DNA from: Thecamonas trahens ATCC 50062
Taxonomy: Eukaryota; Protista; Apusomonadida
Length of the DNA stretch: 64,000 nucleotides
Direction: 5' to 3'
Assembly: GCF_000142905.1 (NCBI RefSeq)
Contig: NW_013657643.1
Span: forward strand, 204,054 to 268,053
Shown: piece after piece, positions 5,651 to 19,800 of the stretch
Layout of the letters: every line of letters begins with the position of its first letter
How positions within the stretch are numbered: position 1 is the first letter of the stretch
Notes under the pieces: generated by a model
Seen by the model: only the letters and a program-made list of their open reading frames with translations
Databases searched by the model: none
What the model was told of the DNA's origin: nothing
Translations under genes and position numbers: made by a program

Positions 5651-6667
5651 ATGGGGAAGACCAAGTCCGAGAGGCCATCCGCGCGGCGGTCGCCGTTCCA
5701 CCTGGCGACAGGCGCCATGACCTGGTCCAAGACCATGCAGCCGCACTCGGCGGGGGACGACCACTACTTTGTCTCCCGATCGGCTCGAGCCTACGGCGTC
5801 TTTGACGGCGTCTCGGGCTCAAACGGCAAGTACGGCACCGGGGCTGCCGAAGAGGCTGCAAACTTCATGTGCTTCAACGCATATGCCGCTGCGCACAAGG
5901 CCGCCGCAAGACGCCGTCCCGTTGATCCGGCCGCCATCATCATCAAGGCTCACAAGAGACTCGCACGCCTCGCCTCCGTTCGCGGCTCCACCACAGCCCT
6001 CGTCGCCGCTCTCCACTGGCGATCGACAAAGTCAGCGCTGCTCACCGTCGCAAACCTTGGCGATTGTGGCGTCCTCATCGTTCGCCCCTACGTCCACCCG
6101 CCACCTGCTCCCGCCTCGGGCATTGACCACGGCTCAACTGCCGCATCGAGCTCGGCCTCCGTCTCGGCCTCGGCCTTGTCCAGCGACCCCTACTCACCGG
6201 CGCCATCGTCATCTTCGTCGTCCTCTTCTTCGTCTTCTTCATCTTCGGCGTCCTCGTCCTCGTCCTCGTCACTGTCGTCCGCCGCATGCCGCGCTGAGCA
6301 GCTGCGCGCCCTGGCAGCCCATCGCTGGCCGCACCCCATGCGGCTGCCCAGAGTCAAGCTCGTCGGCTTCACCGAGCCTATGCGCCACGACTCGGGCATG
6401 GCCCATCCCCACACACTCTCCGCCACCACCCGCCACATCGACCGCAAGATCGACCGCACCGCCTTTGTCGTCCAGCCCGGCGACATCGTTGTCTTTGGCA
6501 CAGATGGCCTCTTTGACAACGTCGACAACAATACCATCGTCAGTGCCCTCACCCGCCATGCCACCGCCTCTCCACACTTTCTCGCCAAGCTCCTCGCCCG
6601 CCTCGCCCTCCACGGGCCCAAGCCCGACGACATCACCGTCCTCGTCGGCCGCGTCTACGAGCTGTAA
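5651..6667 (+). CDS. PP2C-family protein phosphatase, PTC7-like, with poly-Ser insertion
   Basis: GDD, YGVFDGVSG, GSTT, ANLGDCG, GTDGLFDNV and KPDDITV; all metal-binding aspartates are present. Confidence 0.9.
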   Translation: MGKTKSERPSARRSPFHLATGAMTWSKTMQPHSAGDDHYFVSRSARAYGVFDGVSGSNGKYGTGAAEEAANFMCFNAYAAAHKAAARRRPVDPAAIIIKAHKRLARLASVRGSTTALVAALHWRSTKSALLTVANLGDCGVLIVRPYVHPPPAPASGIDHGSTAASSSASVSASALSSDPYSPAPSSSSSSSSSSSSSSASSSSSSSLSSAACRAEQLRALAAHRWPHPMRLPRVKLVGFTEPMRHDSGMAHPHTLSATTRHIDRKIDRTAFVVQPGDIVVFGTDGLFDNVDNNTIVSALTRHATASPHFLAKLLARLALHGPKPDDITVLVGRVYEL

Positions 6668-12587: not shown

Positions 12588-13129
12588 TCAATCCCAGCTT
12601 GCGGTGGGCGCCACGTTGTTGGACGGCAGCGGTGGCGTGGCGGAGCCGTCGTCGTCGTCGTCCGAGGCTGGGACGACTACATCTTCGACTTGGGTCGAAC
12701 CGGAACTCAGACCTCCGGCATTGTCATCGTCCGAGTCGGAGACCGAGACTGCGACGTCGTCGACCTGGGTTGAGCCGGAACTCAAGCCTCCGGTATTGTC
12801 ATCGTCCGAGTCGGAGACCGAGACTGCGACGTCGTCGACCTGGGTTGAGCCAGCACCCGAAACAGCGGCATCGTCAGCATCGCCGTCGTCGTCGTCCGAG
12901 ACAACAACGGTCGAGCCCGACGACGCGCCATCAAGATCTGCGCCATCGTCGCCGTGTACATTGTCGGTCTCCTCAGACTCGTACTCGTACTCGTACTCAT
13001 ACTCACCGCCCTGTTGGCGCTTGAGAAATCCAGCGAGCCACTCTTGGTACGCCTTGTCGTTGGCGTAGTCGGTGATAAAGGAAGTGTCGCCGTTGCCGCC
13101 AAGCTCGGCAGGCAGAGCGGCGGCGGCAT

Positions 13130-13163
<34 letters not shown>

Positions 13164-15839
13164 TGACTCGGCCGTGGCACTGGCAGCAGAACCTGCATCG
13201 GGCGGCGGGAGCGAGGTGGACGAGCATGATGACGACGAGGAGGAGGAGCTGGCGTCCGAGTCCGAGTCCGAAGCGGAAGTTGCAGCGGGTAGCGCGGTCG
13301 CGGCGGTAGTGGTGGTGTCAGCGACAGAGAGCGACGAGTCGACGGCGGAGCTCGGCAGGTTGGAGTCATCGTCGAGAGTGATCGAGATGGCCGGCAGCTC
13401 TGCACTCGGGAGGACGGGGCTCTGATCGAGGTGCTTGAGCTTGCCGGCGGCGGCGAGGACCTCTCGAGTGAGCATCTTGGAGTCTGTCTCAACAAAGGCG
13501 GCGCTCTTGAGGGCGGCAAGCCACTCGTCGCGGGCGGCGAGGTCGTCGGTGGCGAGCAGATACTTTTTCTGGTCGATGTGGGTGACGGAAAACTCGTAGC
13601 GCTCAGCCTCGAATGCGGCGTCAGTGACGGGAACAGAGGTGACATGGTAGCCCGGGAGGTAGCACGAGCCGAGCGGCTTGAGAGCATCATCCGAAGCAAA
13701 GTAGTAAAAGGTGCGCTCGTGGAGGAGCATGAACCGCGGCTTCCACACCTTTTTGAATTTGGACTTTTTGAAGACCCAGCCCTCAAAGGACGCCTCTTTG
13801 CGGAGGAGGTAGACCGAGAGGCCGGCCGAGCCCTTGCCGTCCTTGGCATGGTGCTTGGCCTTGAAGGCGGCGATTGAGTGGGCCGACGGCAGCTCGTAGA
13901 GAAGGACGGGAAGGCGCGACGAGGCCTGGGCGAGGGCTGTCATCCAGTTTGCGTACTGGAAGCCATCGCCGAGGGAGAAGAACCACGGATGGACCTTGGC
14001 CGCCGGGTTGTGCATCCGCGACTTGCGGCGGAGGGTGCCAAAGGCGTTCGACGAAATGGTGATGGGCTGGACGCCGATCGAGTACGCGCGCTGGACCTCC
14101 TGCGAGACTGGCCAGATGATGGCGTCGGCAACCGGAAAGAACGAGACCGGCGTCATGTCGTCGGCCGAGGTGAAGATGTAGAGAACGGCGTCGGCGAGGA
14201 CGACATAGCACTTTGTAAACTTGGCAAAGGCCTTGGTCGTCGCCTTCTCGCGCTTGACAAAGACCTCCGAGCTGAGGTCGGCCTCCATGTCGACGGCCTT
14301 GCGGGCGTTGGCGGCAAGGGTTGGGCCCATCGGTGCCGACGAGCGGCGGCCGCGTGCTTCGCGGATGACAAGCGCTGATCTACGAGCATCAGCGAGAGCG
14401 GCTGCTGTCGAGTTGTGGCGGGCACTCGTGGCAGCCTGCAGACGCGCCACGCCTGACGCGGCGGCGGCGGCCGGAGGTGGCGAGTCAGGCGAGCCGGCGA
14501 CTGACGACGAGTCGCGCGAGAAGACCGATGGGTCGTCGTCGTCGTCATCGTCTGTGGCGGCGGAGCGGTCGGCATTCGAGGTAGGAAGATAGAGCTCGAC
14601 AGAGCCGTCGTCCGAGGCGTACGGCGAGTCGAGGGCAGCGCCGAGGCGTACAAGCTGCGCGATGTCGTCGGGAGGGTTCGACATGTCGACCGGCTGGCCG
14701 CGGGCGACGTACGAGATGAGCTTGACCCAGAGCCGGGCCTGGAGGACCGAGTCGGCCATGAGATGGTAGGTCGAAAACTTGGTGGACGGATGCGGGACGA
14801 GCGAGAACTGCGACGACTTGGGCGAAGACTGGATCGAGTATCCGATGAGCGGGATCGAGTTGCGGGTCACGCCGCGGGTGTCCGAAGAGCCGAACCAGTA
14901 GAGGCAAGCATCAGCGAGGACAATGTAGCGGCGGTTCCATTTTTTGGTCCAGTACGCCAGCTTGCGCAACTCGCCGTGGTACATGGCGTGCGGGAGGAGC
15001 GAGCCGAGCGTGATGGCATTGCCGGTCCGCGCATCGGTGGTGCGCCGCTTCTTGCGGCCGCGCTTGCGGACCTTACCAGCGGCGGCGCCGCTTGTGGCAC
15101 CAGCCGCCGACGGTGCGGGTGGGCGGACGGCAGCGGCTGGCGCCGGCTTGGGCGGGCGGATGGGCCCGAGGGCGGCGGCGGTGGCCGCCGCAGAGACCAG
15201 TCCGGACGACGCCGTCATCGATCGACTTGGAGCCGACGGATGGAGCGACTTGCGGCGCCCGATGGTGCGGGTCGGCTTGCGCGGGCCAGAGAACTCAAAA
15301 GCAATCGACTCAAACTGCGCACGTGAGACTGTCGATGCTGGCGGCCCAGCTGCGCCGCCGCTCGCCTGTGCACGTGCCACTTGCAACGCTGTGTCAAACA
15401 CAGCGTCGTCGACTTGGGTCACCGACTCGACCGGCACCAGCTCAATGCTCGGCAGTGACGGCGGGAGAAAGACAATGACCTCAACAAGCGCAGGATCCAA
15501 AGTCGGTGCCACAATACAGAGTGCGCCCTCCGCCGTCCGCCCACGCCATGTCGTCCGCTCAGCTGCAGCCTTGGAGCCGCCACCAGCTGGAGGCACCTCG
15601 CCTACACAAGGCGGCGCCAACATGTGGACAGTCTTGCCCGGTGTGCCTGACGCAGTCTTGGTTGAACCCAGCGGCAGATTGCTGCTTACAGCAGTCTGAG
15701 GAGCCTGCACCTGTGGTGATGGCAGCTTTGCAGCCTCACACGCAGTGGCGGCAGGAGTGACTGGGGAGGCCGAGCTTGTGGAAGAGGAGGAAGTGGATCC
15801 CGAGTCCGAGAAAGATCCTGAAGATGAAGCTGAGACCAT
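12588..15839 (-). CDS. Protein with three PH domains and an acidic, Ser-rich C-terminal tail
   Basis: PH1 YHGELRKLAYWTKKWNRRYIVL...LWVKLI; PH2 VFVKREK...FTKCYVVL...NWMTAL; PH3 FEGWVFKKSKFKKVWKPRFMLL...EWLAAL. Start uncertain (a possible upstream exon lies next to the gap). Confidence 0.85.
12655..12852 (-). repeat. 75-bp (25-aa) internal tandem repeat, ~2.7 copies, in the PH protein tail
   Basis: GSTQVDDVAVSVSDSDDDN(T/A)GGLSS repeated; ccggaactc recurs at 12700 and 12775. Confidence 0.9.
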
Positions 15840-16017
15840 ATGTACGTGTATGTATGTGTGTGGTGCGTGTGGGTATGGTGTATGGGTGTGTATGGGTGTG
15901 AGGAGAGGACCACGCGTGCAGGTGGCAAAAGGTACCTTGTCGGTTTCGTGCGGCAGGCCGTGGGCCGTGTGCGGGAGGGGAAGAGGGAGGTGGAGGAGTG
16001 GAGGACGAGAAGGGGGG

Positions 16018-16105
16018 AGGGTAGGTAGGTGTAGGTGTAGGTGTAGGTGTAGGTGTAGGTGTAGGGTATGTGTGTGTGTATGTATGTGTGTGTGTGTGTG
16101 TGTGT
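16018..16105. repeat. (GTAGGT)n and (GT)n microsatellites
   Basis: Direct reading. Confidence 0.9.
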
Positions 16106-16213
16106 CAAGTGGGAAGAGTGGCTGAGGTGGTGGTGGGGAGGTGAAGAAGGGGTGGAGGGGTGAAGAAGTCTGGCAAGGTGCTGCAAAGGGTGGTGCAAAA
16201 ATTAGTGGGAGGG

Positions 16214-16419
16214 NNNNNNNNNNNNNNNNNNNNNNNNNNNNNNNNNNNNNNNNNNNNNNNNNNNNNNNNNNNNNNNNNNNNNNNNNNNNNNNNNNNNNNN
16301 NNNNNNNNNNNNNNNNNNNNNNNNNNNNNNNNNNNNNNNNNNNNNNNNNNNNNNNNNNNNNNNNNNNNNNNNNNNNNNNNNNNNNNNNNNNNNNNNNNNN
16401 NNNNNNNNNNNNNNNNNNN
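16214..16419. other. Assembly gap (N run)
   Basis: Run of n. Confidence 1.
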
Positions 16420-16494: not shown

Positions 16495-19400
16495 ATGCAA
16501 GTGCTTTGGGTGGTGTGTGTAGTATGGGTGGGACTAGGGCTCATGGGTGGTGTGGCGGGCATCCTTACAGGCTTTGGTACACCTGAGAACATCACCATTG
16601 CTGGCTTGTTCCCCCTCACTGGCGGCCTCGCCGCTGGTGGTGTCGAGCGGGAGGCCGCCTTCCGCATGGGCATCCAGCACATCAACGCAGACCGAAATCT
16701 CCTTCCGGACGTATGTAGCAGAGGAAGGGCGAGGATGGTGTGTGTTTGTGGGGTGTGGGTGTGTGGGGGTGTGTGGGTGTGTGGGGTGTGTGGGGGGTGT
16801 GGGGGTGTGGGTGTGGGGTGTGGGGGGAAGGCGGCGTCTGGTCCAGGGGTTTGTCGTGGTCAAACGTGCGTCAGTCCGAGGTTGTGAGTGGGATGACGCG
16901 CGATGGGATCAGATGAAGGTGGAGCTGGCTCACGATGAGATGGAGTGGATGGAATTGGTGATGGACAGACGAAGATTATCGGGGTGTCGTTTGATACACA
17001 GACGACGCCATCAGGAGGCATGGTGTCGGCACTCGAGGCGACCAAAGACCCAAGCCTGGTGGCCATTGTCGGGGCAGCGTCATCCTCGGTCTCGCGGGCT
17101 GTACAGCAAGTGGCCTCGATCTTCGAGATTCCGCAGATCTCGTACTCGTCGACAGCGTCGCCACTCTCGAACAAGATCCTCTATCCGTACTTTTTCCGTG
17201 TCGTGGCGCCTGACTCGCTCCAGGGCTCAGCGCTGGCGTCGATTGTGCACTCGATCGGGTGGAGAAAAGCGGCGACGATGTACTCGAATGACGACTACGG
17301 GCTGTCGGGCGTGACCGCGTTTGCGCAACGGGCGTCAGACGTGGGAGTCTCGATCGAGGCCAACATTCCGTTTGCGCCGGGCGCCATCGAGTACGGCGTG
17401 GCGCTGGACCAGCTGGTTAAGCACCACGGCGTCCATGTGGTTTTTCTCAACTGTCTGGTGAGCGACGCAGTGGAGTTGTTCAAGGAGGCCGACCGACGCG
17501 GGCTGCTCGATGGGCAGTACGTGTGGGTGGGGACCGACGGATGGCTGCAGGACGAGCTGCTCAACGTAGGCCTCCCGTCGTCGAAGCTCATCGGCGTGCT
17601 CGGTCTCCGACCGGCGCTGCCATCGGGAGTGCGGCTCGAAGCGTTTCTCGACTCATGGGAGCAGCTGAACGCGACCGAGTTTGCCGGTGCGGGCGACCGA
17701 ACCGTCAACGTTTTCGCGCCGTACGCATACGACGCGCTGTACCAGGTGGCGCGGACAATTGATGCCATGATCCGCGGAAAGGCGAATGCCCTTGATGGCT
17801 CTGAGCTCCGGGCGTGGCTCTCCAACTCGAGCTATGAGGGCACGACGGGCCTGATCTCGTTTGACGAGAACTTTGACTGCATCGCCGCGTACTCGCTCGT
17901 CAACTACCGCGGCGGCGCCGGGTTTGAGATTGTGGGCCGGTGGCTCGCGGAGCAGCGGCTCGAGCTCGACCGCCCGATACTCTACTACGGCAACACAACG
18001 AGCCCGCCATACCTGCCGAGCCCGATGGCGAGCCCGAGCACGTCGTCAATTTCTGCGGGCCTTATTGGCGTCATTGCCGGCATGAGCGCATGCGTGTGCC
18101 TTGGCTTTGGCATCCTTGTGGTCCACAATCTGCGGCGGCGCAAGCACGTGGCGGCGCTCCAGCGTGAGAATCAGCAGCTGGACCGCGAGGCGCGGGCGCT
18201 TAACTCGCGGCTCAACGAGCTCGCCAAGGAGACACACGCATCGGGCTCTTCCACCCCGCCGACAATGGACCTGCCCATCAACCAGGTCATGTCGCTGCTG
18301 ACCTCGATTCGGGCCTCGACGCAGGATTCAGACATGATGGCCAAGCTCGACAAAGCTATCGAATCAATCCAGTCAAACATGCTGTTCCAGCCGTCGACAG
18401 CGATGTTTCCGGACGGGGAGGGCAACGACGACGTCAAGAACTTTGTGCAGGGCACCATCCTGACTAACGTGCCGACGCCATCAAACTCGTTGCAGCGGTC
18501 GGGCGCGGGCCTCCAGACGTACGGCAACGGGTCGGCGGCGAGCCTCACCCCCACGCCCAATTTGGCGGTGACGGTGGCCATGCCGATTCCTGCGGAACTT
18601 GGCGACGTGCTGGGCAAGCTTCGGACACTGGCGTTTGACGCCGAGGCGCTAGTCGCCAAGGATACGACACCGCTGCAGACGGTGTTCATGGCTGTGTGCA
18701 CCCAGAACGCACTGCTCTCACAGCTCCGGCTGGATCCGGTCATTGTGCGCGACGTCATGCTCGCGCTCGACCGGTACACGCCGCGGCTCAACGCGTATCA
18801 CAATGCACAGCGGGCAGCCAACATGGTCCAGTTTGTGCACTACGTGCTCTCTGTCACAGACCTGTACTCGCTCCTCTCACCTCGCGACACGTTTGCGGTC
18901 CTCTTCGCCGCCGCCATCAAGAACGTCGACCACCCTGGCTTCAATGCCTCGTTCCTGGTCCGGACGCGGCACAAGCTCGCGCTGCTGTACTCGAACCAGG
19001 CGGTGCTGGAAATGCATCACCTGGCGGTCTCAATGCAGCTAGTCTTTGAGCGGTTCAAGCTCTTTGACCAGCTGCTCGAGGAGGACATTACCGCCCTCCA
19101 CCACACCATTGTCGACCTTGTCCTCGCATCCGACATGCAGAAACACGTCGAGGTGACCTCACGGTTCTCGCTCCTCATCGACCCGACCGAGCCGTCGAAG
19201 CGGACAGCATGGAAGGCTGCGGTGGCAACCGACAATGGCTTTCGCAACTTGGTCCTCAAGATGGTGCTTAAGCTGGCGGACTTGTCCGACGCGGCGCGGC
19301 CGACCAAGATTGCTCGCGGCCTGGCGCTGCGGTCGATGATCGAGTCGTCGCTGCAGGGCGTGCAGGAGGCGGCGGCAGGCATCGAGGTGTCCCCGTTTAT

Positions 19401-19800
19401 GGACGGTGCCATGTCGTCGGTGGCAAAGTCACAGGAAGGAATCATCCGCTTTGTCACCCTCCCCATGTTCTCGGCCTTTGCCGAAGTCTTTACCCTCACC
19501 GAAGTGCTGCAGAACCTCTCGGACAACATGCTCTTCTGGCAGCGCGTTGTTCCGTCGACGCTCCAGCCGTTCTATGACGCGCTCCTCGCCTCTCACGCCG
19601 CCACCGCAGAGTCGATCCAGCCAGGCTCGTCCGCCGCGCTTGTCTCGGCGCAGAAGTCGCCTCTATCATCACCAGGAACCGGGGCGGCCATCACGGCGCC
19701 GAGGCCCAGCCAGAGCGAGGCCTCGCCGTCGTTGCCTACCCCTGCCACTCCCGCGCCGGCCAGCGCATCGATTGCATCGGCCGGAGGCGCGGAGCCATAG
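16495..19800 (+). CDS. Single-pass receptor: signal peptide, Venus-flytrap (ANF_receptor/PBP1) domain, TM, coiled coil, PDE8-like class I phosphodiesterase with substituted metal ligands; exons 16495-16710 and 16969-19800 (~1015 aa)
   Basis: Exon 1 MQVLWVVCVVWVGLGLMGGVAG...ITIAGLFP...INADRNLLPD, then a GTATGT...ACAG phase-0 intron. VFT motifs AIVGAASSSVS, IPQISYSSTASPLS, YPYFFRVVAPDS, YAYDA, YEGTTGLISFD. TM GLIGVIAGMSACVCLGFGILVV followed by RRRK. PDE motifs YHN, VDHPG, VLEMHH, VLASDM, KLADLS, SPFMD, SQ. Confidence 0.92.

What the first reader, a model, noticed from the sequence alone, without database searches (positions are those of the whole stretch)
16495..19800. Venus-flytrap receptor fused to a cyclic-nucleotide phosphodiesterase: candidate ligand-gated 'receptor PDE'
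Seen in sequence: one two-exon gene encodes a signal peptide (exon 1, missed by the ORF track), a VFT domain with class C GPCR/ANF-receptor hallmarks, a single TM with an RRRK stop-transfer, a coiled coil (LQRENQQLDREARALNSRLNEL) and a class I PDE domain. Between coil and PDE, TMDLPINQVMSLL...KLDKAIESIQSNMLFQP resembles the regulatory helical segment preceding the PDE8 catalytic domain (EAPITKVINII...ALDRVLEILRTTELYSP). Established: VFT-TM-coiled-coil receptors with cyclase outputs are known (natriuretic peptide receptors, trypanosome receptor adenylyl cyclases), and choanoflagellate RhoPDE is a light-gated PDE. I do not know of a characterised VFT-gated PDE. Inference: this is the mirror image of a receptor cyclase, in which an extracellular amino-acid-like ligand controls cAMP/cGMP turnover or binding through a dimeric coiled coil without a G protein.
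Basis: partly seen in the sequence, partly recalled or inferred. Interest (0 to 1): 0.9.

Follow-up and report, generated by a model that had tools for sequence, protein, structure and literature searches.

The report
Amino-acid receptor with dead phosphodiesterase
This marine protist gene really does encode a cell-surface amino-acid-type sensor fused to a cyclic-nucleotide phosphodiesterase domain, but that domain has lost three of its four metal-binding residues, so it probably signals by binding rather than by breaking down cAMP or cGMP.

Summary
The gene has two exons (16495-16710 and 16969-19800). RNA contigs from three independent studies show the exact GT..AG splice. It encodes 1015 aa: signal peptide, mGluR-like Venus-flytrap (VFT; ANF_receptor 4e-56), one TM helix, RRRK, a four-heptad leucine zipper, a PDE8-like helical hairpin and a PDEase_I domain (3e-54).

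It is Thecamonas trahens AMSG_07791, already in public databases as a "hypothetical protein". I found no paper on this architecture.

The "receptor PDE" reading is only partly supported. Zinc ligands H164, H200 and D201 (PDE4D numbering) are R, K and N here. They are invariant in 92-93 of 93 other PDE domains compared, including nine other PDEs of the same genome. The enzyme is very probably dead.

All three ANF-type VFTs in this genome sit in front of PDE domains. Every member of this apusomonad clade lacks H200, which is K or R in five of six.

VFT-TM-PDE proteins with a complete catalytic set do exist elsewhere: the fungus Sorochytrium and two unidentified eukaryotes. My best reading is a dimeric amino-acid receptor whose pseudo-PDE acts as a binding or scaffolding module.

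The scan's first-stage readers had already noted the pseudo-enzyme here and similar VFT-PDE genes on two other pieces of this genome.

The parts
16495..16710 (+). Exon 1: start codon, signal peptide (aa 1-28, nt 16495-16578) and the first strand and helix of the VFT (aa 31-72).
   Evidence: A homologous N-terminus is contiguous in P0002 and P0009.
16711..16968 (+). Intron of 258 nt, GT..AG, phase 0. It contains a G/T-rich simple repeat at about 16738-16827.
   Evidence: The joint 16710/16969 is seen in RNA contigs of three runs from three studies. The paralogue P0009 and the homologue P0002 have an intron at the same position.
16969..19800 (+). Exon 2: the rest of the coding sequence, with the stop at 19798-19800.
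   Evidence: RNA contigs tile 16969-19748 and none lies beyond about 19822.
16585..17967 (+). Venus-flytrap (ANF_receptor / class-C-GPCR type) ectodomain, aa 31-405, interrupted by the intron. The amino-acid-motif residues are S111 (17083), T134 (17152), D154 (17212), Y182 (17296) and D262 (17536).
   Evidence: Pfam 3.9e-56. Best solved relatives are mGluR6/8/4 at about 1e-32. Motif residues are conserved in alignments A1 and A2. Their roles are described in PMC2680970.
18049..18144 (+). Single transmembrane helix (aa 433-460) plus the RRRK stop-transfer (aa 461-464).
   Evidence: It is the only internal hydrophobic segment in a Kyte-Doolittle scan.
18145..18231 (+). Juxtamembrane leucine zipper, aa 465-493: L469, L476, L483 and L490, with N473, A480 and L487 at the +4 positions.
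   Evidence: Sequence. AlphaFold predicts a continuous helix 453-494 at low confidence. The motif is conserved in the apusomonad-clade homologues P0009, P0002 and P0013 but largely missing in Sorochytrium P0050.
18265..18393 (+). PDE8-like pre-catalytic helical hairpin, aa 505-547.
   Evidence: BLASTP with the Strigamia PDE8 orthologue starts at this segment. Predicted helices are 509-522 and 526-543. The segment is shared with Sorochytrium P0050 and Mastigamoeba P0085.
18394..18591 (+). Low-complexity, probably disordered linker, aa 548-613.
   Evidence: pLDDT is 20-33 for the 10-residue blocks spanning aa 541-610. Length is variable among homologues.
18592..19557 (+). Class I PDE-fold domain, aa 614-935, with a degenerate metal site. 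R687 (18811) stands for H164, K723 (18919) for H200 and N724 (18922) for D201. Retained are H683 (H160), H727 (H204), E753 (E230), D843 (D318) and Q894 (Q369). I897 stands for F372.
   Evidence: Pfam 3e-54. PDE4D alignment at 8e-44. Site table against 93 other PDE domains. Coordinates.
19558..19797 (+). Ser/Pro/Ala-rich C-terminal tail, aa 936-1015.
   Evidence: pLDDT below 30 for most of it (aa 951-1015; 60 for aa 941-950).

Best explanation
AMSG_07791 of Thecamonas trahens is a transcribed, correctly spliced, single-pass type I membrane receptor.

Outside the cell it carries an mGluR-type Venus-flytrap domain. This domain keeps the five residues that hold the alpha-amino-acid group in mGlu1, so the ligand is probably an amino acid or a close derivative (inferred).

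Inside the cell, the TM helix runs into a four-heptad leucine zipper with an Asn at a core position. This suggests a parallel dimer (inferred from sequence). A PDE8-like helical hairpin and a flexible linker then lead to a class I PDE-fold domain.

That domain has lost three of the four zinc/magnesium ligands (H164R, H200K, D201N). It therefore very probably cannot hydrolyse cAMP or cGMP. This rests on the sequence shown here plus established PDE enzymology.

The output is thus non-catalytic. Flytrap closure would re-orient the zipper and hairpin and change what the pseudo-PDE domain binds. One candidate is a cyclic nucleotide held without metals: the purine-recognising Gln is retained, and basic residues sit where the metal ligands H164 and H200 were. 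The other candidate is a protein partner, such as one of the two paralogues. Which of these applies is not shown.

The protein belongs to a small apusomonad clade in which the H200 ligand is lost in every member. VFT-TM-PDE proteins from other eukaryotes with intact sites look like true ligand-gated PDEs.
For: - Splice and transcription.
- Domains.
- Topology.
- Identity with public protein P0162.
- Metal-site loss. H164, H200, D201 and D318 are invariant in 92-93 of 93 other PDE domains, including nine other Thecamonas PDE domains.
- Not simple decay, point 1: the homologue P0002 (44% identity, marine metagenome) keeps the full architecture and also has basic residues at the H164 and H200 positions (R, R). 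Paralogues C4 and C3 have K at H200.
- Not simple decay, point 2: the clade is supported in both domain trees, with SH-aLRT 99 for the PDE and 100 for the VFT.
- All three ANF_receptor loci of the genome precede PDE domains.
- Amino-acid motif: S111, T134, D154, Y182 and D262 have the exact mGlu1 spacing 23/20/28. Their roles are given in PMC2680970.
- Intact-site relatives P0030, P0047 and P0050.
Against: - No activity or binding assay exists. Loss of activity is inferred from residue identity only.
- D318, E230, H160 and H204 are retained, so an unusual metal site or chemistry is not excluded.
- The hydrophobic clamp Phe is Ile, and the N321 position is Asp, which may also weaken nucleotide binding.
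- The AlphaFold model is poor (mean pLDDT 57), and the dimer test could not be run.
- No single RNA piece spans the VFT to the PDE; contigs are at most 444 nt. Continuity rests on the uninterrupted reading frame.
- The ligand is unknown.
Confidence: 0.6

Rival explanations
1. This is an active ligand-gated receptor PDE. Ligand binding to the flytrap switches hydrolysis of cAMP or cGMP on or off through the dimeric coil.
For: The full PDE fold is retained at 3e-54. D318, E230, H160, H204 and Q369 are kept. The same architecture with a canonical site exists in P0030, P0047 and P0050. The PDE8-like regulatory hairpin is conserved.
Against: H164, H200 and D201 are replaced by R, K and N. These positions are invariant in 92-93 of 93 other PDE domains and bind both metals in solved PDE4 structures (alignment; established enzymology). 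The closest homologue, P0002, has lost H160 as well.
Confidence: 0.12
2. This is a regulatory subunit of a heteromeric receptor. It pairs through the conserved zipper with the C4 paralogue (KNC52294.1), which keeps H164, D201 and D318. The arrangement would resemble GABA-B or T1R heterodimers, or pseudokinase-kinase pairs: one subunit senses and the other acts.
For: There are three paralogues with nearly identical zipper and hairpin motifs. Site loss is graded: C4 lacks only H200 among the metal ligands. Class-C VFT receptors commonly work as heterodimers (established knowledge).
Against: C4 also lacks H200 and the purine-binding Gln, which is His, so it too may be inactive. No co-expression or interaction data exist.
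Confidence: 0.18
3. This is a decaying relic: a formerly active receptor PDE on its way to becoming a pseudogene, with no present function.
For: The catalytic residues are lost. The third paralogue (C3) carries two apparent 1-nt frameshifts in the assembly.
Against: The 1015-codon frame is intact. The gene is transcribed and spliced in three independent metatranscriptome studies. The architecture is kept in a homologue at only 44% identity. In a 99%-identical environmental copy, none of the 5 amino-acid changes falls in the PDE domain (the numbers are too small for a test).
Confidence: 0.05

Closest known systems
Receptor guanylyl cyclases / natriuretic peptide receptors (ANF_receptor VFT, one TM, kinase-homology domain, coiled coil, cyclase)
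   Same: Same Pfam family of ectodomain, single TM, and a dimerising helix between the membrane and a cyclic-nucleotide-metabolism fold. They also contain a pseudo-enzyme module, the kinase-homology domain.
   Different: The output fold here is a class I PDE rather than a class III cyclase. There is no kinase-homology domain. The VFT here is closer to mGluRs than to NPR-A.
Venus kinase receptors (VFT, one TM, tyrosine kinase; activated by amino acids; PMC2680970, PMC4026697)
   Same: A class-C-type VFT on a single-pass receptor with an enzyme-fold output. Both are dimeric and use the same five-residue amino-acid motif logic.
   Different: The output is a PDE fold rather than a kinase, and here it is catalytically degenerate. 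The host is a protist, not an invertebrate animal.
Rhodopsin phosphodiesterase (RhoPDE) of choanoflagellates (PMC8774190; bioRxiv 10.1101/2020.04.14.040642)
   Same: A membrane sensor fused through a helical linker to a class I PDE domain. It is the only characterised sensor-gated PDE of this kind.
   Different: The sensor is a multi-pass rhodopsin gated by light, and its PDE is catalytically active. Here the sensor is a VFT with one TM, and the PDE site is degenerate.
Oomycete GPCR-PDE bigrams (PMC5784254)
   Same: A predicted receptor with a C-terminal PDE accessory domain, uncharacterised biochemically.
   Different: A seven-TM receptor part rather than a VFT with one TM.
PDE8 and PDE4 families
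   Same: The catalytic fold is most similar to PDE4 among solved structures (8e-44). The pre-catalytic hairpin plus catalytic domain aligns with a PDE8 orthologue (27% over 440 aa, 5e-41).
   Different: There are no REC/PAS (PDE8) or UCR (PDE4) modules. The metal ligands are missing. The protein is membrane-anchored with an ectodomain.
LapD-type degenerate EAL receptors of bacteria (PMC5231407)
   Same: A transmembrane protein whose degenerate phosphodiesterase domain binds, but does not cleave, a cyclic nucleotide messenger. This is a working analogy for a pseudo-PDE as a binding module.
   Different: An unrelated fold (EAL versus HD-type class I PDE), a different messenger (c-di-GMP) and inside-out signalling. 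Binding has not been shown here.

Membership tests
Class I cyclic-nucleotide phosphodiesterase (PF00233) | Sequence and fold homology to the PDEase_I catalytic domain | tested here: met
   Pfam 3e-54 over 235 of 238 profile positions. PDE4D at 8e-44.
Class I cyclic-nucleotide phosphodiesterase (PF00233) | Metal-binding residues H164, H200, D201 and D318 (PDE4D numbering) | tested here: not met
   The residues here are R687, K723, N724 and D843. The first three are invariant H/H/D in 92-93 of 93 other PDE domains.
Class I cyclic-nucleotide phosphodiesterase (PF00233) | Purine-recognising glutamine and hydrophobic clamp (Q369, F372) | tested here: inconclusive
   Q894 is kept, but F372 is I897.
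Class I cyclic-nucleotide phosphodiesterase (PF00233) | Hydrolysis of cAMP or cGMP | not testable with these tools
   This needs an enzyme assay.
ANF_receptor / class-C-type Venus flytrap (PF01094) | Bilobed periplasmic-binding-protein type I fold | tested here: met
   Pfam 3.9e-56. mGluR6/8/4 at about 1e-32.
ANF_receptor / class-C-type Venus flytrap (PF01094) | [quoted passage not shown] | tested here: met
   S111, T134, D154, Y182 and D262 have identical spacing (23/20/28). All are invariant or nearly so in A1 and A2, except Y182, which is Phe in P0013. Mapping to mGlu1 numbers relies on my knowledge of the mGlu1 motifs plus PMC2680970.
Class C GPCR | 7tm_3 heptahelical domain after the VFT | tested here: not met
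   There is only one TM. No PF00003 match was found anywhere in the genome, but the tool's controls cannot validate that negative.
Receptor guanylyl cyclase | Class III cyclase domain C-terminal to the TM | tested here: not met
   No Guanylate_cyc match in the protein. The genome's 50 cyclase-domain matches lie elsewhere.
PDE8 | N-terminal PDE8A_N/REC and PAS domains | tested here: not met
   These are absent but present in the Strigamia orthologue.
PDE8 | Pre-catalytic helical segment | tested here: met
   The BLASTP alignment begins at aa 504 and includes the segment.

The most novel reading that the evidence does not exclude
The pseudo-PDE domain is a metal-free cyclic-nucleotide receptor. 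Arg687 and Lys723 would take the place of the two metal ions and hold the cyclic phosphate, while the retained Gln894 reads the base. The protein would then integrate an extracellular amino-acid signal with the intracellular cAMP or cGMP level, or buffer that level. That would make a class I PDE fold serve as a cNMP sensor rather than an enzyme, a eukaryotic counterpart of LapD-type degenerate phosphodiesterase receptors.
Probability: 0.2. Interest if true: 0.8.

Novelty: new variant of a known kind. Interest (0 to 1): 0.62.

Why it matters
Single-pass receptors that make cyclic nucleotides are textbook material. Receptors that destroy them are known only as light-gated RhoPDE and as uncharacterised oomycete GPCR-PDE fusions.

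This work shows three things. First, a chemically gated counterpart (VFT, one TM, PDE) exists as a small, unpublished family in several microbial eukaryotes. Second, some members keep a complete active site. These are candidates for true ligand-gated PDEs and for chemogenetic tools that lower cAMP or cGMP. Third, the apusomonad branch, including this gene, has turned the PDE into a conserved pseudo-enzyme with basic residues in place of two of the zinc-binding histidines.

Thecamonas belongs to the apusomonads, the sister group of Opisthokonta (PMC12557545). It has mGluR-type flytraps but no detectable class C seven-helix domain. The family therefore also bears on how flytrap modules were deployed before animal class C GPCRs arose.

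Tried and rejected
- Complex prediction for a homodimer of aa 431-552 was unavailable, so there is no dimer test.
- The ESM Atlas gave no usable hit.
- The word-indexed homologue searches found almost nothing beyond P0001 and P0002. The full HMMER scan was needed.
- The AlphaFold full-length model from a 10-row alignment was weak: mean pLDDT 57, with the PDE part mostly 65-94. I used it only for secondary structure and ran no fold search on it.
- The linker alone has no significant match among solved-structure sequences. The PDE8 resemblance was tested instead against a full-length PDE8 orthologue.
- An AU test of whether all VFT-PDE PDE domains form one clade did not finish in three runs. Single versus multiple origin of the fusion is therefore unresolved. 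Both domain trees place P0030 and P0050 (and, in the VFT tree, P0047, which was not in the PDE tree) away from the apusomonad clade, but with weak backbone support.
- Comparison with the 99%-identical environmental copy gave only 4 synonymous and 5 non-synonymous differences, too few for a selection test.
Exon 1 and exon 2 were searched separately by reference. The full-length protein used later (P0162) is the public record returned, and it was checked against each exon piecewise.
Full report
**1. The observation**

The window is GC-rich (about 0.55-0.67 per 2-kb window) eukaryotic DNA with assembly gaps. On the + strand an ATG at 16495 opens a 72-codon exon. It encodes a hydrophobic signal peptide and the first strand and helix of a periplasmic-binding-protein fold. 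The exon ends at 16710 and is followed by GTATGT. After an AG at 16967-16968 the same phase continues in a 943-codon frame to a stop at 19798-19800.

RNA contigs from three metatranscriptome or RNA runs (X1, X3, X7; three studies) carry exactly the joint 16710/16969, skipping 258 nt with GT..AG ends. Contigs from the four runs laid tile most of 16585-19748 with gaps, and none lies beyond about 19822. No contig is longer than 444 nt. Continuity of the VFT with the PDE therefore rests on the uninterrupted frame, not on one spanning read.

Pfam scores the exon-2 frame with ANF_receptor 3.9e-56 and PDEase_I 3e-54. Exon 1 alone gives a weak hit to the first 35 positions of Peripla_BP_6. A hydropathy scan finds the signal peptide and exactly one internal TM segment (aa 433-460), followed by RRRK.

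The juxtamembrane helix has Leu at 469, 476, 483 and 490, with Asn473, Ala480 and Leu487 at the intervening core positions. This is a classic four-heptad zipper. AlphaFold draws one helix from 453 to 494, two helices at 509-522 and 526-543, then disorder to about 613 and the helical PDE domain (overall confidence is low).

They were searched separately by reference. The full-length sequence used later (P0162) is the public database record, which matches exon 1 and exon 2 piece by piece.

**2. Identity**

Exact-sequence look-up shows the organism is Thecamonas trahens ATCC 50062. The gene is AMSG_07791 (KNC51722.1 / XP_013755851.1, UniRef A0A0L0DHD4), 1015 aa, named only "hypothetical protein / PDEase domain-containing protein". 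The public gene model already contains exon 1.

A 99%-identical copy occurs on an environmental metagenome contig.

**3. The ectodomain**

Among solved structures the best matches are metabotropic glutamate receptors 6, 8 and 4, at about 1e-32.

The five main residues that hold the alpha-amino-acid group in mGlu1 are S165, T188, D208, Y236 and D318. Their roles are summarised in PMC2680970. They correspond here to S111, T134, D154, Y182 and D262, with the same 23/20/28 spacing. They are invariant or nearly so across the family alignments; the exception is Tyr182, which is Phe in P0013. An amino acid or a close derivative is thus the most likely ligand. This is an inference.

**4. The PDE domain**

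The alignment with PDE4D (8e-44) was combined with a site table built from 93 other PDE domains. That set includes nine canonical PDE domains of the same genome.

| PDE4D position | Residue here |
|---|---|
| H164 (zinc ligand) | R687 |
| H200 (zinc ligand) | K723 |
| D201 (zinc ligand) | N724 |
| D318 (zinc ligand) | D843, retained |
| H160 | H683, retained |
| H204 | H727, retained |
| E230 | E753, retained |
| Q369 | Q894, retained |
| F372 (clamp) | I897 |

In the 93 other domains, H164, H200, D201 and D318 are present in 92-93. The single exception is an artefact, described in section 5. On established PDE enzymology, a site lacking three of the four residues that bind the two metals cannot support the metal-activated hydroxide mechanism. 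I therefore read the domain as a pseudo-enzyme. A first-stage note of this scan (s1-751750) reached the same reading, and I verified it independently.

**5. The family**

The genome has 14 PDEase_I loci but only three ANF_receptor loci, and all three lie just upstream of a PDE domain in the same orientation. The three are this gene, C4:570-573 kb (KNC52294.1, 1065 aa, with an intron at the same position) and C3:542-545 kb (AMSG_11618). No 7tm_3 domain was detected in the genome, although that negative cannot be validated by the tool's controls.

An all-against-all HMMER scan of 1.84 billion representatives, followed by Pfam scans, found few further proteins with both domains:

- P0002 and P0013, both from marine metagenomes
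- the fragment P0048
- P0030 and P0047, from unidentified eukaryotes
- P0050, from the blastocladiomycete Sorochytrium milnesiophthora (KAL7750821.1)

A Mastigamoeba protein (P0085) joins a different binding-protein fold (NMT1/THI5) to the same hairpin-PDE module.

The Thecamonas proteins together with P0002, P0013 and P0048 form a well-supported clade in the PDE tree (SH-aLRT 99). The same grouping, without the PDE-only fragment P0048, appears in the VFT tree (SH-aLRT 100). Within this clade the H200 position is K, K, K, R or I and is never His. P0002 has also lost H160, H164 and D201, with R at both the H164 and H200 positions.

By contrast, P0030 and P0047 have a complete catalytic set. So does P0050, once a mis-called intron is corrected: the genomic DNA encodes the missing ...CADLSNP... 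stretch between a GT and an AG.

The receptor-PDE idea is therefore probably correct for those relatives. The apusomonad branch is a conserved pseudo-enzyme lineage. Whether the fusion arose once or several times is unresolved, because the backbone support is weak and the AU test did not finish.

**6. The linker**

Several stand-alone PDEs of chytrids, Fabomonas and Rhodelphis align from the same point. The hairpin is thus an old pre-catalytic module and is not specific to the receptor.

**7. Mechanism**

What is shown:
- a spliced, transcribed, intact gene
- the domain order
- the loss of metal ligands
- conservation of the architecture at 44% identity

What is inferred:
- a dimer through the zipper and the flytraps, as in class C receptors, natriuretic peptide receptors and Venus kinase receptors
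- an amino-acid ligand
- transmission through the zipper and hairpin
- a non-catalytic output

For the output I see two candidates. One is metal-free binding of cAMP or cGMP, supported by the retained Gln and by conserved basic residues at two former metal-ligand positions. The other is pairing with a paralogue or another protein. The genome's 50 cyclase-domain matches and 11 canonical PDE domains show a very large cyclic-nucleotide system in which such a sensor or buffer would make sense.

**8. Novelty**

Six literature searches found no description of a VFT-PDE receptor or of a class I PDE pseudo-enzyme of this type.

The nearest published systems are:
- RhoPDE (PMC8774190)
- oomycete GPCR-PDE bigrams (PMC5784254)
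- Venus kinase receptors (PMC2680970)
- receptor guanylyl cyclases

The sequences themselves are in public databases with automatic names. I rate the finding as a new variant of a known kind: single-pass VFT receptors with an enzyme-fold output. The unexpected twist is that this member is catalytically dead.

The scan's first-stage readers also noted VFT-PDE genes on two other pieces of this genome (s1-753697, s1-751760). These are presumably the paralogues I analysed.

Noticed in passing
window 16214-16419: An assembly gap (run of N) lies only 75 nt upstream of the start codon, so the promoter and 5' UTR of the gene are not in the assembly. Mechanical ORFs on both strands run through it and are artefacts.
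   Followed up: no
window 16738-16827 and about 15800-16130: There are G/T-rich simple repeats (GGGTGTG-like) inside the intron and TG/CA-type microsatellites upstream. The reads tool skipped 16738-16827 as a repeat.
   Followed up: no
L016 (G000:C3:541000-547000), about 2165 and about 3565: The third VFT-PDE paralogue (AMSG_11618) needs two 1-nt frame corrections to read through, each with no room for an intron. One is next to a CCGG and the other next to a T5 run. It is either a pseudogene or an assembly error. The public model covers only the middle ORF (459 aa).
   Followed up: partly
L017 (Sorochytrium JAVQLU010000014.1), about 6093-6170: The public model KAL7750821.1 appears to use a wrong acceptor site and so drops seven residues, including the D318-equivalent Asp. 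The GT..AG intron that restores the canonical motif is visible in the DNA.
   Followed up: yes
G000:C6:302505-308078 (- strand): A PDEase_I match (147 bits) lies about 2.6 kb upstream, on the same strand, of two class III cyclase-domain matches. This may be a PDE-cyclase fusion or a gene pair. The genome has at least 50 cyclase-domain matches in all.
   Followed up: no
whole genome G000: No 7tm_3 (class C GPCR) domain was detected, although three mGluR-like flytraps exist. In this organism the flytrap appears only on PDE-fold receptors. The negative result is not validated by the tool's controls.
   Followed up: partly
P0085 (Mastigamoeba balamuthi EP00727_P011150): An NMT1/THI5-like binding-protein domain is joined to the same hairpin-PDE module with a canonical active site. 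The 1250-aa model looks like two tandem copies merged.
   Followed up: no
P0004, P0022, P0038, P0003: The nearest VFT-only relatives (38-39% identity) are stand-alone proteins of about 450-520 aa. One is labelled as coming from a Candidatus Kariarchaeaceae archaeon MAG. Another is a double-VFT protein with one TM. The origin of the apusomonad flytrap is open: eukaryotic or prokaryotic-like.
   Followed up: partly
window 12588-16198 (- strand): The upstream neighbour on the opposite strand is a long gene for a PH-domain-like protein with acidic repeats, already noted by the scan as s1-752678. Its listed ORF is extended artificially through the N gap into exon 1 of the receptor gene.
   Followed up: no
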